Both the position numbers and the translations under genes were made by a program. The notes beneath the pieces were generated by a model. It searched no databases and was not told where the DNA came from. It saw nothing but the letters and a program-made list of their open reading frames with translations. From the sequence record OQ031493.1: a stretch of DNA of 64,000 nt. One strand, 5' to 3'. Shown here in pieces: positions 32,910-47,248 of this stretch (the stretch's first letter is position 1; every line of letters begins with the position of its first letter).

Positions 32910-33086
32910 TTAATTATTAAAAGATAAATCATAATCACTTTGTCTGCGATTCGGATTAACAGGATCAGGATATTTTCCAGTTTTGATAACTTCTTTTATA
33001 GCTCTAAAATCACGTTCTAGAAAATCTAGTTTTTTAACTAACTCTTTTTCTAATTCTTTATTGAGTAGTCTTCTTAATTTGCTCAT
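32910..33086 (-). CDS. 58-aa ORF, not in track
   Basis: manual translation MSKLRRLLNKELEKELVKKLDFLERDFRAIKEVIKTGKYPDPVNPNRRQSDYDLSFNN fills the gap. Confidence 0.55.
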   Translation of the reverse strand: MSKLRRLLNKELEKELVKKLDFLERDFRAIKEVIKTGKYPDPVNPNRRQSDYDLSFNN

Positions 33087-33453
33087 CTACGTATACTCTC
33101 ACAATGAACCAATTGATTAGGCCAAAACCTTTTGGTGTGATGGTAATGTCATCTTTATATCCATTTTTAGTGATTACATTACGTAATACTTTAATTGCTT
33201 CAGGTGGAATAAGATTAGCATTACCGGTAACACTATACTCGAAATAATAACCTACACCTGGTAAATAACCTGATGCAATCTGGTTAGTACCTGTGATATT
33301 ACTAACGTGTTGGAAGTCACTAAAAGCATTCTTGTAGAATAACAAAATATTAGGAATTACTTCATCCCTAATAGTAGAACTAGTAATGGCATCCGCCGAT
33401 GGAAAATAAGGTACTAATTCATCTGTTACATTGGTGCTATTAATATCGGACAT
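33058..33453 (-). CDS. hypothetical early protein (FPS-motif paralog)
   Basis: 131 aa, GAGGA SD, first gene after promoter 33500. Confidence 0.75.
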   Translation of the reverse strand: MSDINSTNVTDELVPYFPSADAITSSTIRDEVIPNILLFYKNAFSDFQHVSNITGTNQIASGYLPGVGYYFEYSVTGNANLIPPEAIKVLRNVITKNGYKDDITITPKGFGLINWFIVRVYVDEQIKKTTQ

Positions 33454-33499
33454 AATCTTTTCCTCATTATAAAAGGATAAATATCTTTATGGTAATCCT

Positions 33500-33507
33500 G
33501 TAATATA
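33500..33507 (-). promoter_or_regulatory. early promoter TATATTAC
   Basis: exact octamer upstream of 33453. Confidence 0.75.
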
Positions 33508-33537
33508 GATTTAAATTAATTTATAATGAATGGCATA

Positions 33538-33560
33538 AAGGAGCCCCTGGTGGGCTCCTT
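33538..33560. terminator. intrinsic terminator-like hairpin (possibly bidirectional)
   Basis: aaggagccc-ctggt-gggctcctt with T runs on both sides; no gene ends here, so it implies an upstream non-coding transcript. Confidence 0.65.
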
Positions 33561-33571
33561 TAATGTAATAG

Positions 33572-33740
33572 GTCCGACCCCTATCTAGAGGTCGGTGAGT
33601 AGCAAGGCACCGTAGTTGGGGTTCGTGTCGTTCCTGACGATACTTTAGTACCCCGGTTTATTTACGACTGGATCACCCCCTTAAAGTGCAGTGCGTTTTA
33701 CGCAAACTGCCTTGCTCTATATCATTGCACTGTGCGTATT
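33572..33740 (-). ncRNA. candidate structured ncRNA complementary to the 16S rRNA 3' end
   Basis: no ORF; GC-rich; several stems; 33663-33683 and 33599-33615 match the 16S 3'-terminal sequence on the + strand; strand inferred from G-U compatibility and the terminator. Confidence 0.55.
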
Positions 33741-33803
33741 TTTATTCGTTAGCTAATCTTATGACTTAGAGTTATATTTACATACCCCTTAAGGAAAAAT
33801 GCA

Positions 33804-35915
33804 ATGATAGACTCATTTAGGAAGCTAATGGGCTCGCTATCAATTACTGAAACTGATCAAGAAATTATCATCAGTGGTTTTGATGGTGCTGCATTCATTA
33901 GAGATATTAACAAGTATTGGCGAACCACTAAATTAGCTACGCAGTTATTTAACACGGTTAGTCGTCGTAGTATTTCATTTTATAAATTCTTTGCTCCTGA
34001 AATATATTACATGCTAGAAGCAGTAAAGAATTATAGAAGTAGATACATCTCTATTAAAACTGTTAATGCCATCCGTGAAGCAATGCTTCAATATACCTGG
34101 TTAAAAAATACTCGTCCTGTAGATACCAACTCTGTACCAGGTAGACTCAATTTCAAGATGTTAGACAAATTGACATTTACACCAGATGAGTCTCAAAAAG
34201 CTTATTTTGAAAATTATAATTATCGAATTGACCAGTATGGTTTACGTGGTGATATTGTTGCAGGTAAACCTGGTACTGGTAAGACATTCATGACGATGGC
34301 TATTGCTGAAATGGTTGAGTCGGATATCATTATAGTTGTTTGTGAAAAGAAGTCTATTGATCTAATATGGAAGCCATCTATTATTGAGATGTATAAGGAA
34401 AGACAAAAAGTATGGTCGACCATTGATGATAAAGCCTACAACGGTCAAAGAATACTTATATCCCATTACCAGGCGCAAGATAAAATAATTGATCTATTAA
34501 GAAGCGGTATATTCAAAGGTAAGAACATTACGGTGATTCTGGATGAATCACACAATATGAACGATCCTAATTCTGCACAATCTCTTAAGTTCCAGCAAAT
34601 ATGTTTTATGTCTAACTCTAATAACAGATTATTAGCGTCAGGTACCCCTGTTAAAGCACTTGGTTCTGAATTAGTAAGTGCATTAAGAGTATTAGACGAT
34701 CTCTTCACCAATGAGGTTGAAGAACGTTTTAAGAAAGCATTTGGAAAAGAGACACAGAAAGGATTAGATATTGTCCAACATCGCTTTGGGTTAATTGCGT
34801 ACGTCATTGAAAAGAAAGATACTGAGGTTTTACCACCGAGGATAAAAGCGTATCGTATCAAGATACCAAATGGATCACAGTATACTCTTAATGCCATTAA
34901 ACGTGATTGTGAAGCTTTTATTAGAGAACGTGTAAAGTTCTATGCTGCGCGCCGACCAGAAGATGAGAAGTATTGGGCTAAACTAATGGCGATACACGAG
35001 AACTCTCTTAAGACCCAGGCGCAGAAAGATGGTTTCGCTCGCTATAAGAATTTGATTAAAATAATTCAGAAGAATCAAGACCCGCGATACATTGGTGAAG
35101 AAATTAAAGAATCTAACCAATATGAAAAAATGTTTATAGAGCCAACTTTACCTCGTAATGAAATAGCTGCTTTTAGAGATATTAAATCAGTTATAAAATA
35201 CGTTATGCTAAAGATACAAGGTGAATGTTTGGGAAGGGTTTTAGGTGCTAAACGCATTCAGTGCCATGTGGACATGGTACCGTATATTGACTGGGTTGGT
35301 ATCACTGAATCAACTATGAAGAAAACGATTGCATTTACATCGTTTGTTGAGGTTGTTGATACTGTTGATAAGTACACCAATAAATTAGGTATGCATCCGG
35401 CGGTGGTGTATGGTAAAACCAATGACAATTTACCTCAAATAATCAGTAGATTTGAGAAAGACCCTAAATTAAATCCATTGGTAGCTACATATGCTTCCCT
35501 TTCAACAGCGGTTCGTATGACGATGGCTGATACTATGGTGACAATTAATTCACCGTTTAGGCATTACATTCTAGAACAAGCTATTGCTCGAATTTACCGT
35601 AAAGGTCAGGATTCACAAACAGTCGTATATCAATGTACTCTCGATACAGAAGATGAACCGAATATCTCAACAAGGTCAGATGACATTCTAAAATGGAGTC
35701 AGGCAATGGTTGAAGCTATTATGGGTATTAAATCTCCATTTGAGATCACAGAGTCATTAGAAAGTTATGTTGATAAAAATAATAATTTTGATGAAAATAA
35801 AATCATTTATCAGATGCTAAAAGAATCATTTGAGAAGTATGATATCGCAATTGATTTTAATGACTTTGATACACGTATGTATAAACCATATCAGCCCGCA
35901 TATATGCGGTTTTAA
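33804..35915 (+). CDS. SNF2/DEAD-like superfamily 2 helicase (phiKZ gp203-like)
   Basis: Walker A GKPGTGKT, DESH, SGTP, QAIARIYRKGQ. Confidence 0.85.
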   Translation: MIDSFRKLMGSLSITETDQEIIISGFDGAAFIRDINKYWRTTKLATQLFNTVSRRSISFYKFFAPEIYYMLEAVKNYRSRYISIKTVNAIREAMLQYTWLKNTRPVDTNSVPGRLNFKMLDKLTFTPDESQKAYFENYNYRIDQYGLRGDIVAGKPGTGKTFMTMAIAEMVESDIIIVVCEKKSIDLIWKPSIIEMYKERQKVWSTIDDKAYNGQRILISHYQAQDKIIDLLRSGIFKGKNITVILDESHNMNDPNSAQSLKFQQICFMSNSNNRLLASGTPVKALGSELVSALRVLDDLFTNEVEERFKKAFGKETQKGLDIVQHRFGLIAYVIEKKDTEVLPPRIKAYRIKIPNGSQYTLNAIKRDCEAFIRERVKFYAARRPEDEKYWAKLMAIHENSLKTQAQKDGFARYKNLIKIIQKNQDPRYIGEEIKESNQYEKMFIEPTLPRNEIAAFRDIKSVIKYVMLKIQGECLGRVLGAKRIQCHVDMVPYIDWVGITESTMKKTIAFTSFVEVVDTVDKYTNKLGMHPAVVYGKTNDNLPQIISRFEKDPKLNPLVATYASLSTAVRMTMADTMVTINSPFRHYILEQAIARIYRKGQDSQTVVYQCTLDTEDEPNISTRSDDILKWSQAMVEAIMGIKSPFEITESLESYVDKNNNFDENKIIYQMLKESFEKYDIAIDFNDFDTRMYKPYQPAYMRF

Positions 35916-46806: not shown

Positions 46807-47248
46807 TAGTATCAGCTACAATTGCAACTGGTGACCATCGAGCGGCAACAGCCTCACATACACCGATCGAATTCACTCGACGAATCGCATGAGCACCAGT
46901 ATCAATTACACTGAAACTGAGTTCACTAATGATTTCCACTCCTTTTAGTTCAGCGCTACTATCAATAACCTGGGTACTAATTAGATAGTTAGCTGTATCA
47001 TTATTATACGCAAGTACTAGTCTAAAAACCATGAGGGAGTTATCATTATCGGTGATGCCAGCGACTAGCTCATGATTCGAAGTGAGTGTATAGATACAAC
47101 TACTTTCTTGAGTGGTAATTGGTAATCCTGGTGAAGAACTATATACACTAGGTGCATTAGCTGTATGTAGTTCAAACTTATTTACAGCGGAGTTAGGACC
47201 AGGAACTTTATAACCAATAGGTCGGGCAGTGAAGATTACAACGTTCAT
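46754..47248 (-). CDS. hypothetical early protein
   Basis: 164 aa, GAGGA SD, first gene after promoter 47294. Confidence 0.75.
   Translation of the reverse strand: MNVVIFTARPIGYKVPGPNSAVNKFELHTANAPSVYSSSPGLPITTQESSCIYTLTSNHELVAGITDNDNSLMVFRLVLAYNNDTANYLISTQVIDSSAELKGVEIISELSFSVIDTGAHAIRRVNSIGVCEAVAARWSPVAIVADTSGEDFGDVCASYIKSSN

What the first reader, a model, noticed from the sequence alone, without database searches (positions are those of the whole stretch)
33599..33683. Phage intergenic sequence complementary to the 16S rRNA 3' end (anti-SD plus both strands of helix 45): candidate ribosome-targeting RNA
Seen: + strand 33663-33683 is TACGACTGGATCACCCCCTTA. The Pseudomonas-type 16S 3' end (from memory) is TGCGGCTGGATCACCTCCTTA, so 18/21 positions are identical. 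All three differences (G>A, G>A, T>C) become G-U wobbles if the minus strand is the RNA, so UAAGGGGGUGAUCCAGUCGUA could pair along all 21 nt with the anti-SD and the 3' strand of h45. A second block 47 nt away, 33599-33615 GTAGCAAGGCACCGTAG, matches 16S GTAACAAGGTAGCCGTAG (1492R-primer region and 5' strand of h45) with one bulge, one wobble and one mismatch. It lies in the same order as in the rRNA, and a hairpin occupies the place of the GGAA loop. No start codon follows this super-SD at usable spacing, the region is ORF-free, and an orphan terminator (33538-33560) lies downstream on the minus strand. Inference: a phage sRNA that clamps or unzips h45 and the anti-SD to trap, remodel or redirect host 30S subunits. 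Alternatively, a + strand decoy of the 16S 3' end for anti-phage ribonucleases, or a captured rDNA relic. I know of no described system of this kind, but I cannot check the literature.
Basis: partly seen in the sequence, partly recalled or inferred. Interest (0 to 1): 0.92.

Follow-up and report, generated by a model that had tools for sequence, protein, structure and literature searches.

The report
Phage RNA matching the ribosome's mRNA-docking tail
The flagged sequence lies inside a previously unannotated, conserved, folded ~185-base non-coding RNA gene of phage phiKZ and its Pseudomonas relatives; its only invariant stretch is a perfect, start-codon-less "super Shine-Dalgarno" able to pair with the whole free 3' tail of the host 16S rRNA, so the phage probably makes an RNA that docks on host ribosomes.

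Summary
The window is Pseudomonas phage phiKZ, reverse-complemented. The finding lies in the 350-nt gap between PHIKZ204 and the PHIKZ203 helicase.

Judged on phiKZ alone they are weak. An unrelated 18/21 match to 16S occurs elsewhere in the window, and block 1 is marginal (p≈0.04).

Comparative data change the picture:
- The gap holds a ~185-nt structured RNA gene on the minus strand (about 33717 to 33532). It has a phiKZ middle-promoter-like element and a canonical phiKZ intrinsic terminator.
- Its helices covary strongly: 23 of 25 pairs show compensatory changes across 15 sequences.
- I found 18 distinct homologues, all in phiKZ-like phages or related viral and metagenomic contigs.
- In 17 of the 18, the stretch AGG(G/A)GGUGAUCCA between helix P2 and the central domain is unchanged; the 18th carries a one-base insertion. 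It is fully complementary to the 16S 3' tail.
- The predicted duplex is about -20 to -22 kcal/mol, the theoretical maximum; ordinary SDs give -5 to -9.
- No start codon follows the stretch.

Block 1 is the 3' arm of the RNA's own closing helix. Complementarity to h45 is not supported.

Best reading: a trans-acting RNA that binds 30S through the anti-SD. This is sequence-based only; expression and binding are untested.

The parts
33532..33717 (-). The whole predicted non-coding RNA gene, about 180-186 nt. The 5' end lies at or a few nt upstream of 33717; the 3' end lies in the UUUAU(GCC) after the terminator hairpin.
   Evidence: The core matches the covariance model at 33597-33717 (-), 101.9 bits. 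It sits in a GC island of about 50% against a 30-35% background. The minus strand folds with z=-4.6. Homologues with the same architecture occur in other phages.
33735..33743 (-). Middle-promoter-like element AAAAATACG, at -26..-18 relative to the G at 33717.
   Evidence: AAnnWTAC sits at the same distance in phiKZ, PhiPA3, PS119XW, 201phi2-1, L145 and L189. The published phiKZ middle-promoter motif is AAanTTACc at about -24 (PMC4666361).
33717..33726 (-). Invariant AAUGAUAUAG: a TATG-like start region (TATAG in clades 1 and 3, TATG in clade 2). AUAG may also extend P1 by pairing with CUAU.
   Evidence: Alignments. The late-promoter consensus is TATG with G as +1 (PMC4666361). The exact start site is not mapped.
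33711..33716 (-). P1 5' arm (AGCAAG).
   Evidence: All 6 P1 pairs show compensatory changes. P1 duplexes are found in all 16 homologues analysed, with different sequences.
33688..33710 (-). P2 hairpin (GCAGU-UUGCG-loop-CGCA-CUGC).
   Evidence: RNAalifold and pair counts, with compensatory changes in 5 of 7 pairs.
33668..33681 (-). Invariant junction strand AGGGGGUGAUCCAG, the 'super-SD', complementary to 16S CUGGAUCACCUCCU.
   Evidence: Unchanged in 17 of 18 homologues, except G/A at the one position where both bases pair with the 16S U; L158 has a one-base insertion. Duplex with the 13-nt free tail is -18.2 to -21.7 kcal/mol, against -21.0 for a perfect 13-mer. It is the only site in the window with 11 or more contiguous pairs. 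It is left unpaired by the consensus structure.
33618..33654 (-). Central domain: P3 (GGGGU/ACCCC) enclosing the P4 hairpin. P4 carries a GNRA tetraloop in most relatives but not in phiKZ.
   Evidence: All 12 P3/P4 pairs show compensatory changes. In the CM alignment, phiKZ GGGG/CCCC is homologous to GGUAC/GUACC of the relatives.
33599..33615 (-).
   Evidence: It pairs with 33711-33716 and covaries with it. Its 16S complementarity is marginal (p=0.036).
33574..33595 (-). P5 hairpin between the core and the terminator. It is present in clade 1 and absent in clade 2.
   Evidence: Per-sequence folds show a hairpin at this place with different sequences.
33532..33561 (-). phiKZ-type intrinsic terminator: GGAGCCC-ACCAG-GGGCUCC followed by UUUAUGCC.
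   Evidence: It matches the published phiKZ terminator motif, a hairpin followed by YTTATKYYGT (PMC10914365). It is one of 14 such sites in the window. It is conserved on this strand in all homologues. In W10-2 the loop is inverted while the stem is intact.

Best explanation
The 350-nt gap between PHIKZ204 and PHIKZ203 encodes a stand-alone, folded, non-coding RNA of about 185 nt on the window's minus strand.

**Anatomy (shown by comparative analysis)**
- It is transcribed from a middle-type phage promoter and ended by a standard phiKZ terminator.
- Closing helix P1 encloses hairpin P2, a 14-nt single-stranded junction, and a P3/P4 domain.
- The junction, AGG(G/A)GGUGAUCCAG, is the only strictly conserved part. 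It is the exact complement of the free 3' tail of 16S rRNA (…CUGGAUCACCUCCUUA-3').

**Proposed mechanism (inferred)**
1. In the infected cell the junction pairs with the anti-SD tail of 30S subunits, as an mRNA's Shine-Dalgarno does, but over 13-16 bp or more.
2. No start codon follows, and a folded domain sits where an mRNA would enter the decoding channel. The RNA would therefore occupy the anti-SD and platform without being translated.
3. The most likely consequence is competitive occupation of host 30S subunits from the middle phase of infection. This could damp or re-route SD-dependent initiation, or it could use the 30S as a docking site for the rest of the RNA.

**Shown versus inferred**
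- Shown: gene boundaries, strand, fold, conservation and pairing potential.
- Inferred: expression, actual 30S binding and the downstream effect.
For: **Identity and place**
- The window is phiKZ at 100% identity. The gap lies between divergent PHIKZ204 and PHIKZ203.
- The gap is a GC island and folds better than shuffled sequence.
- It matches no Rfam family and no tRNA or tmRNA.

**Homologues**
- The same architecture occurs in SL2, PhiPA3, PS119XW, 201phi2-1, Phabio, Psa21 and Noxifer.
- It also occurs in nine IMG/VR contigs and one metagenome contig.
- All copies lie within about 2 kb of the SNF2 helicase gene.

**Fold**
- 92.9% of cells are paired, and 23 of 25 pairs have compensatory changes.
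- 0 of 500 shuffles reach the observed values. Slid controls give 43% paired or less.

**Strand**
- The terminator matches the published phiKZ motif only on the minus strand.
- The middle-promoter-like element sits at a fixed distance.
- Helices contain 30 G-U against 11 A-C pairs.
- The minus strand is more stable in 13 of 16 homologues, by a mean of 6.4 kcal/mol.
- In PhiPA3, 201phi2-1 and Phabio both flanking genes lie on that strand.

**Stand-alone gene**
- In PS119XW the gene past the terminator is convergent, so the RNA cannot be a leader there.

**Ribosome link**
- For every homologue, the best local alignment to antisense 16S is the 3' end.
- The duplex with the 13-nt tail is at the theoretical maximum.
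- The only variable position in the block is G/A opposite a 16S U, and both bases pair with U.
- It is the only site in 64 kb with 11 or more contiguous pairs to the tail.
- No ORF or start codon follows.
- The consensus structure assigns the block no partner, and thermodynamic partners differ from member to member.
Against: - There are no expression data. The main texts of the phiKZ transcriptome and Grad-seq papers do not mention this locus, and their supplementary tables were not available.
- Thermodynamic folding leaves the block only about 40-60% unpaired.
- An invariant junction strand in a folded RNA could be conserved for tertiary or protein contacts instead.
- phiKZ genes themselves use SDs. 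The PHIKZ203 RBS is one example. An indiscriminate 30S sponge would therefore also hit phage mRNAs.
- The family was not found next to the helicase in chimalliviruses of Xanthomonas, Ralstonia, Erwinia, E. coli or Serratia, nor in three of the closer metagenomic relatives.
- All named hosts are Pseudomonas, so co-variation with host 16S cannot be tested.
- The covariation alignment was fitted to the model, and it includes one doubtful row (L167).
Confidence: 0.55

Rival explanations
1. The SD-like block is a non-translated ribosome-loading or stabiliser element of the STAB-SD kind. A bound 30S would protect this RNA, or terminator read-through transcripts into the next gene, from RNases, or would act as a standby site. 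The RNA's real function would lie elsewhere or in cis.
For: - Non-translated SD sequences that stabilise transcripts by binding the 16S 3' end are known: STAB-SD (Agaisse & Lereclus 1996) and the polypurine 5' stabiliser of Hue et al. 1995, both listed in the references of PMC3997798.
- In phiKZ, PhiPA3, 201phi2-1, Phabio and Psa21 a gene follows on the same strand, 50-100 nt after the terminator.
- Many phiKZ 5'UTR-derived short RNAs that arise by premature termination have been reported (PMC10914365).
Against: - The downstream genes are not homologous between phages.
- In PS119XW the neighbouring gene is convergent.
- In phiKZ a separate early-promoter-like site lies between the terminator and PHIKZ204.
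- The block sits 26-38 nt inside a helix-enclosed core rather than at a free 5' end.
- 14-16 invariant nt is far more than stabilisers need.
Confidence: 0.15
2. The invariant junction is conserved for a reason unrelated to the ribosome, such as a tertiary contact or the binding site of a phage or host protein or of another RNA. Its identity with the perfect SD would then be incidental.
For: - Junction strands are typically the most conserved parts of folded RNAs.
- The usually GNRA-capped P4 and the multi-helix core suggest a compact tertiary fold.
- The block is only about half unpaired in thermodynamic models.
- CCCCUUAA in the adjacent helicase 5'UTR is complementary to UUAAGGGG of the block, so other RNA partners are conceivable.
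Against: - A 13-14-nt exact complement of the functional 3' tail of 16S is about a 1-in-10^8 coincidence for a given conserved block.
- The only tolerated variation (G/A) is the one that keeps pairing with 16S.
- In 11 of the 16 members analysed the two bases after CCAG are CC or UC, which both keep pairing with 16S; this flanking pattern was read off the sequences and not tested statistically.
- No other match to the block's complement exists in the window.
Confidence: 0.12
3. One reading: the RNA pairs with both the anti-SD/3' strand of h45 and, through block 1, the 5' strand of h45 and the 1492 region, clamping or unzipping h45.
For: - The two blocks are colinear with 16S in phiKZ and PS119XW (second-best alignment at 1489/1493-1510).
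- Restricted-target p is 0.036, 0.008 and 0.034 in phiKZ, PS119XW and L158.
- In nearly all members the best restricted match falls at the P1 3' arm.
- In phiKZ, L152 and L158 pairing continues into UGCGG of h45.
Against: - Block 1 is the P1 3' arm and covaries with its own 5' arm. Its sequence is not conserved between clades.
- 11 of 16 members have p above 0.05.
- Against the whole 16S, equally good matches occur at unrelated sites.
- Extension beyond the invariant block is not significant.
- h45 is a stable helix that is buried in the mature 30S subunit (established ribosome structure).
Confidence: 0.07
4. The + strand is the RNA, acting as a mimic or decoy of the 16S 3' end for proteins or nucleases that recognise it. 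Alternatively, the region is a decaying captured piece of rDNA with no function.
For: - The + strand carries CTGGATCACC(C/T)CCT, identical or nearly identical to the 16S 3' end.
- All Watson-Crick helices could also form on the + strand.
Against: - The terminator motif, the promoter elements and the orientation of neighbouring genes fit only the minus strand.
- G-U pairs outnumber A-C pairs 30 to 11.
- Similarity to 16S is limited to about 16-21 nt within a 185-nt covarying fold that is otherwise unlike rRNA.
- The block is invariant while its flanks diverge, which indicates selection rather than decay.
Confidence: 0.04

Closest known systems
STAB-SD and polypurine 5' stabilisers (Bacillus thuringiensis cryIIIA leader; the Bacillus subtilis polypurine stabiliser of Hue et al. 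1995)
   Same: Each has an SD sequence with no start codon behind it, and its job is to bind the 3' end of 16S rRNA rather than to start translation.
   Different: Those are short cis elements near the 5' end of mRNAs in Gram-positive bacteria, and they protect the same transcript. Here the block is 14-16 nt, lies inside a helix-enclosed core of a stand-alone ncRNA of a Gram-negative phage, and has no conserved downstream gene.
Structured mRNA operators that trap 30S subunits on the platform (for example the rpsO/S15 pseudoknot and the thrS operator); from general knowledge, not tested here
   Same: A folded RNA is held on the 30S by its SD-anti-SD helix, with the fold placed so that the mRNA channel is not entered.
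   Different: Those are parts of translated mRNAs and need a repressor protein. This RNA has no ORF and a much longer SD duplex.
Ribosome-associated ncRNAs (for example tRNA-derived fragments that bind the small subunit and compete with mRNA in Haloferax and yeast); from general knowledge
   Same: A small trans-acting RNA has the ribosome itself, not an mRNA, as its proposed target.
   Different: Those are processing fragments of cellular RNAs and do not use anti-SD pairing. This is a dedicated phage gene with its own promoter, fold and terminator.
phiKZ and 201phi2-1 short non-coding transcripts found by Grad-seq and ONT-cappable-seq (3'UTR_PHIKZ298, 5'UTR_p40, sRNA upstream of gp182/gp277)
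   Same: They occur in the same phages, have the same kind of promoter and terminator, are ORF-free, and are conserved between genera (PMC8545117, PMC10914365, PMC11512511).
   Different: They are different loci. None is described as carrying anti-SD complementarity, and this locus is not mentioned in the main text of those papers.
Synthetic antisense oligonucleotides and universal 16S reverse primers against the 16S 3' end (AAGGAGGTGATCCAGCC); from general knowledge
   Same: The sequence is practically the same as the RNA's junction in PhiPA3 and PS119XW (UUAAGGGGGUGAUCCAGCC). Such oligomers are known to bind the 16S tail.
   Different: Those are artificial. Here the sequence is presented by a natural folded RNA.

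Membership tests
Any Rfam 15 family | A match at or above the family's gathering score. | tested here: not met
   There are 0 matches in the whole window at the gathering threshold. In 33440-33810 only chance-level hits appear, with E above 5.
tRNA / tmRNA | A cloverleaf or tmRNA fold detected by ARAGORN. | tested here: not met
   There are 0 such genes in the window.
Ribosome-binding site of a protein-coding gene | A start codon 4-12 nt downstream of the SD core, followed by a conserved ORF. | tested here: not met
   No ATG, GTG or TTG lies at usable spacing in phiKZ, PhiPA3 or the Noxifer clade. This was read directly from the sequences. The gap has no minus-strand ORF of 20 aa or more.
phiKZ-type intrinsic terminator (Putzeys et al. 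2024) | A GC-rich hairpin followed by YTTATKYYGT. | tested here: met
   The minus strand reads GGAGCCCACCAGGGGCUCC-UUUAUGCCAU. The same pattern is present in all homologues.
phiKZ middle promoter (Yakunina et al. 2015) | AAanTTACc centred near -24, with a TATG-type start. | tested here: inconclusive
   AAAAATACG lies at -26..-18 relative to the G of TATAG, and it is conserved at the same spacing in clade 1. The start motif is TATAG rather than TATG in clades 1 and 3, and the start site is not mapped.
Structured non-coding RNA (generic) | Helices supported by compensatory base changes across homologues. | tested here: met
   23 of 25 pairs show changes on both sides, 92.9% of cells are paired, and 0 of 500 shuffles reach this. 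Caveat: the alignment was fitted to the model.
STAB-SD-type non-translated SD element | An SD complementary to the 16S 3' end, not used for initiation. | tested here: met
STAB-SD-type non-translated SD element | It acts in cis to stabilise a downstream mRNA. | tested here: inconclusive
   The stabilising effect cannot be tested with these tools. Gene context argues against an obligatory cis role: in PS119XW the adjacent gene is convergent, and the downstream genes are not homologous.
16S rRNA gene fragment or relic | Similarity to rDNA extending beyond a short motif. | tested here: not met
   The best alignments cover only 16S 1510/1520-1538. The second block is not significant in most members. 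There is no SSU rRNA model hit.
Ribosome-binding trans-acting RNA | Physical association with 30S or 70S. | not testable with these tools
   Only pairing potential could be computed.

The most novel reading that the evidence does not exclude
phiKZ-like nucleus-forming phages make a dedicated folded RNA that plugs the anti-Shine-Dalgarno tail of host 30S subunits. This would be a natural trans-acting anti-ribosome RNA. It could be used from the middle phase of infection in one of three ways:
- to withdraw ribosomes from SD-dependent initiation;
- to re-route initiation;
- to tether ribosomes through the P3/P4 domain to a phage partner, for example at the phage nucleus surface where mRNAs emerge.
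Probability: 0.45. Interest if true: 0.9.

Novelty: new variant of a known kind. Interest (0 to 1): 0.8.

Why it matters
Phages are known to take over host translation with proteins; in phiKZ itself, gp014 binds ribosomes. No phage RNA is known whose target is the ribosome's mRNA-docking sequence.

phiKZ-like phages separate transcription, inside a protein 'nucleus', from translation in the cytoplasm. How ribosomes are allotted to phage messages is an open question. A conserved RNA with a maximal-affinity anti-SD ligand gives that question a concrete, testable handle.

The finding also adds a new structured RNA family, with at least 18 members in three clades and none in Rfam, to a well-studied model phage. 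In addition, it is a natural example of a folded scaffold that presents an anti-SD-binding strand, which may interest people who design orthogonal translation systems or antisense tools.

Tried and rejected
- **Rfam and ARAGORN:** nothing found.
- **phiKZ-only statistics:** an 18/21 match to 16S is matched by an unrelated site at 46901, so I did not use it as evidence.
- **Block 1 and the extension into h45 as 16S-pairing arms:** tested against shuffles and against the whole 16S, and rejected as unsupported. I initially saw resemblance to antisense 16S by eye in clades 2 and 3, but it did not survive the tests.
- **Pairing of the GGGGG of the block with CCCC at 33618-33621 (the phiKZ minimum-energy fold):** rejected, because the CM alignment shows that CCCC pairs with GGGG at 33651-33654 as helix P3, homologous to GGUAC/GUACC in relatives.
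- **Pattern CGTAGTT…TGGATCACC in viral contigs:** mostly noise.
- **Single-protein helicase search:** found only phiKZ itself. The alignment-based search worked.
- **Metagenome scan:** only 3 loci, yielding one new member.
- **BLAST of the L150 and L152 elements against GenBank phages:** only terminator-motif hits, or none.
- **Helicase flanks in chimalliviruses of other host genera, looking for co-variation with host 16S:** the element was absent, so the test could not be made.
- **Supplementary tables of the transcriptome papers:** not held.
- **Identity with the published p40 5'UTR ncRNA, which co-sediments partly with 30S:** rejected, because it lies in a different operon.
- **Small-ORF reading:** rejected.
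Full report
**What the window is**

The 6-kb stretch around the finding is identical to Pseudomonas phage phiKZ and about 45 near-identical isolates. The window is the reverse complement of the reference, so phiKZ position = 246571 − window position.

The finding lies in a 350-nt gap (33454-33803). The gap has no ORF of 30 aa or more, and none of 20 aa or more on the minus strand. It sits between two divergent genes: PHIKZ204 (minus strand, 33058-33453) and the SNF2/DEAD helicase PHIKZ203 (plus strand, 33804-35915). No feature is annotated there in any of the records I looked at.

**Checking the observation**

The 54-mer GTCGTAACAAGGTAGCCGTAGGGGAACCTGCGGCTGGATCACCTCCTTAATCGA occurs in more than 100 genomes, mostly Pseudomonas. 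I took a complete P. putida 16S from one of them as a yardstick.

On phiKZ alone the statistics are modest:
- Scanning the window against all 16S 21-mers gives two ungapped 18/21 matches. One is this site; the other is unrelated, at 46901.
- Block 1 reaches only p=0.036 against dinucleotide shuffles, even when the target is restricted to 16S 1479-1519.

Measured as pairing with the last 16 nt of 16S, however, the site is unique in 64 kb. It has 16 contiguous pairs. Nothing else reaches 11, although the window holds dozens of real ribosome-binding sites.

**What is really there**

The gap is a GC island: about 50% over 33540-33740, against 30-35% around it. It folds better than shuffled sequence, more so on the minus strand (z=-4.6 against -3.2). 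Rfam and ARAGORN find nothing.

Sensitive BLAST shows that part of the gap is conserved in other genera of phiKZ-like phages: PS119XW, PhiPA3, 201phi2-1 and Phabio. In each it lies in an ORF-free gap of 260-320 nt near the helicase gene. Further members came from these searches:
- a pattern scan of viral contigs;
- a helicase-anchored fetch of 70 viral loci searched with nhmmer, regular expressions and a covariance model;
- one metagenome locus;
- phage Psa21.

This gives 18 distinct sequences in at least three clades:
- Clade 1: phiKZ, SL2, PhiPA3, PS119XW, 201phi2-1, Phabio, Psa21, L009, L018, L145, L189, L336.
- Clade 2: Noxifer (L153), L146, L147, L148.
- L150 stands on its own.
- Clade 3: L152, L158.

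The adjacent helicases are 44-58% identical to PHIKZ203, or 93% for SL2.

**Which strand**

Four independent lines point to the window's minus strand.
1. The left end of the element is, on that strand, a GC hairpin followed by (C/U)UUAUG(C/U)(C/U)(G/A)U. This is the conserved phiKZ intrinsic-terminator motif of Putzeys et al. (PMC10914365). My scan finds 14 such sites in the window. On the plus strand the hairpin is not followed by that motif.
2. At the right end, the minus strand carries AAnnWTAC at -26..-18 from the G of an invariant TATAG (TATG in clade 2). The spacing is the same in phiKZ, PhiPA3, PS119XW, 201phi2-1, L145 and L189. Yakunina et al. describe phiKZ middle promoters as AAanTTACc near -24, and the late consensus as TATG with G as +1 (PMC4666361).
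3. In PhiPA3, 201phi2-1 and Phabio both neighbouring genes lie on that strand, and the upstream gene has its own terminator.
4. Helices hold 30 G-U pairs against 11 A-C pairs. The minus strand is the more stable in 13 of 16 members.

The RNA therefore runs from about 33717 to about 33532, roughly 185 nt. The exact 5' end is uncertain by a few bases. AUAG just upstream of 33717 often pairs with CUAU after P1, which would place the start at the G of AAUG instead.

**The fold**

The architecture runs as follows: closing helix P1; hairpin P2 directly after its 5' arm; a single-stranded junction; a central domain (P3 enclosing P4, which ends in a GNRA tetraloop in most members); the 3' arm of P1; in clade 1 an extra hairpin P5; then the terminator.

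P1 exists in all 16 members analysed, with different sequences: AGCAAGGCA, CCAAGGC, UCAUGAAGGC, GUGCAAGG, GUACAGGC, GUGUUGGUAG, GCACUGGUAG and others.

On the model-based alignment of 15 sequences:
- 92.9% of cells form standard pairs;
- 23 of 25 pairs show changes on both sides;
- none of 500 column shuffles reaches the observed values;
- sliding the partners by 1-3 columns drops pairing to 31-43%.

Two caveats apply. The alignment was fitted to the structure, and one row (L167) is doubtful. RNAalifold on plain MAFFT alignments independently recovers P2, P3 and P4 with compensatory changes.

**The invariant junction**

Between P2 and the central domain, 17 of the 18 members carry AGG(G/A)GGUGAUCCA, followed by G in all of them but Phabio. 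L158 has a one-base insertion (AAGGAAGGUGAUCCAG). This is the complement of 16S …CUGGAUCACCUCCU….

- The single variable position (G or A) lies opposite a 16S U, so both variants pair.
- In 11 of the 16 members analysed the next two bases are CC or UC, which both keep pairing with 16S GG.
- For every member, the best local alignment to antisense 16S is the 3' end (1510/1524 to 1536/1538).
- The predicted duplex with the 13-nt free tail GAUCACCUCCUUA is -18.2 to -21.7 kcal/mol. A perfect 13-mer gives -21.0, and ordinary SDs give -5 to -9.
- No start codon follows at usable spacing in any clade, and the gap has no minus-strand ORF.
- The consensus structure gives the block no partner.
- Thermodynamic models leave it 40-60% unpaired, with partners that differ from member to member.
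- The GGGGG/CCCC pairing seen in the phiKZ minimum-energy fold is not homologous. The CM alignment shows that CCCC belongs to P3.

Positions 33599-33615 are the conserved CUACGG plus the 3' arm of P1. That arm covaries with its own 5' partner and differs between clades. This is what a structural helix does, and it is not what a strand selected to pair with an invariant rRNA would do.

Its complementarity to 16S 1489-1512 reaches p<0.05 only in phiKZ, PS119XW and L158, and p is 0.06-0.6 elsewhere. Against the whole 16S, equally good second hits fall at unrelated places in most members. Extension of pairing 3' of the invariant block towards the h45 loop is not significant either. I therefore regard the 'both strands of h45' idea as unsupported, although it is not excluded for phiKZ itself.

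**How it most likely works**

Shown: a stand-alone RNA gene with its own promoter-like and terminator signals, a covarying fold, and an invariant strand with maximal pairing potential for the anti-SD tail.

It is not an obligatory leader. In PS119XW the gene beyond its terminator is convergent. Elsewhere the downstream genes are unrelated. In phiKZ an early-promoter-like site, conserved with Phabio, lies between the terminator and PHIKZ204.

Inferred: the junction pairs with the 16S tail of 30S subunits as an SD does, but over 13-16 bp or more. No codon follows, and P3/P4 begins about 10-20 nt after the SD core. The RNA would therefore sit on the platform and occupy the anti-SD, and probably the entrance of the mRNA path, without being translated.

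The net effect could be any of three things: competitive withdrawal of 30S from SD-dependent initiation from the middle phase on, a re-routing of initiation, or use of the 30S as a docking site for whatever the P3/P4 domain binds. I cannot tell these apart.

One difficulty is that phiKZ genes use SDs themselves, so an indiscriminate sponge would need abundance control or a partner.

**Rivals**

The rivals are listed with their confidences in the structured fields:
- a STAB-SD-like self-protecting or standby element;
- a junction conserved for protein or tertiary contacts, with an incidental match to the SD;
- a + strand 16S decoy, or an rDNA relic.

**Comparison with what is known**

The closest known mechanism is the non-translated SD that binds the 16S 3' end to stabilise a transcript: STAB-SD, and the polypurine 5' stabiliser of Hue et al. 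1995 (cited in PMC3997798). Those are short cis elements of mRNAs.

From general knowledge, 30S-entrapping mRNA operators and ribosome-associated ncRNAs are functional analogues.

The published phiKZ and 201phi2-1 short RNAs are at other loci: 3'UTR_PHIKZ298, 5'UTR_p40 and the sRNA upstream of gp182/gp277. Three full-text searches found no paper describing a phage RNA complementary to the anti-SD. The transcript may nevertheless be listed without comment in supplementary tables that I could not read.

**Distribution**

All named hosts are Pseudomonas: aeruginosa, chlororaphis/atacamensis, fluorescens and syringae. Within ±8 kb of the helicase gene, the element is absent in chimalliviruses of Xanthomonas, Ralstonia, Erwinia, E. 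coli and Serratia. It is also absent within the fetched flanks of three closer metagenomic relatives.

**Verdict**

The locus is a new, well-supported structured RNA family whose defining feature is a start-codon-less, maximal Shine-Dalgarno. Ribosome targeting is the best explanation (about 0.55), but it rests on sequence alone.

Noticed in passing
L152 9205-9330 (+): Directly after the homologue's terminator, the promoter-like stretch TTAAGTATTTGTTTGTGTA…TATATAG is repeated. It is followed by a second ORF-free unit of about 90 nt with its own hairpin and terminator tail. This may be a second small RNA made from a duplicated promoter.
   Followed up: partly
L167 13137-13575 (+): An ORF-free gap about 2.4 kb from a distant helicase homologue (37% identity) carries a perfect AAGGAGGTGATCC 10 nt before a phiKZ-type terminator. 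Its architecture is otherwise different. The covariance model gives E=0.007. It may be a remote or independent version of the same idea.
   Followed up: partly
L335 (phage W10-2), equivalent of window 33547-33551: The five-base loop of the RNA's terminator hairpin is inverted (ACCAG to CTGGT) while the stem is intact. This looks like a hairpin-loop flip between near-identical phages.
   Followed up: no
window 33785-33795 (+): The helicase PHIKZ203 5'UTR reads CCCCTTAAGGA just before its start codon, and the same sequence occurs in PS119XW. CCCCUUAA is complementary to UUAAGGGG in the RNA's invariant block, so pairing between the RNA and the helicase RBS is conceivable.
   Followed up: no
window 33500-33513 (+), that is minus-strand TAAATCTATATTAC: An AT-rich motif between the RNA's terminator and PHIKZ204 is conserved with Phabio. 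It looks like a phiKZ early promoter, although I recalled that consensus from memory. If so, PHIKZ204 has its own promoter.
   Followed up: partly
window 46901-46921 (+): ATCAATTACACTGAAACTGAG matches 16S 301-321 at 18 of 21 positions. It lies elsewhere in the window, has no conservation argument behind it, and serves as the chance yardstick.
   Followed up: yes
SL2 MF805716.1 74235-77165; PhiPA3 gp233; PS119XW gp231: The helicase genes of these relatives are 0.8-1 kb longer than PHIKZ203, and tblastn hits them in two pieces. This suggests an insertion, such as an intein, an intron or an extra domain; the genes are annotated 'DarB-like' in RefSeq.
   Followed up: no
window, 14 sites (for example 13295 +, 18672 +, 38366 -, 40196 -): Hairpin+YTTATK terminators of the published phiKZ type recur through the window. 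Several form back-to-back pairs on opposite strands (13275/13295, 18651/18672, 21842/21908), which suggests bidirectional terminators.
   Followed up: partly
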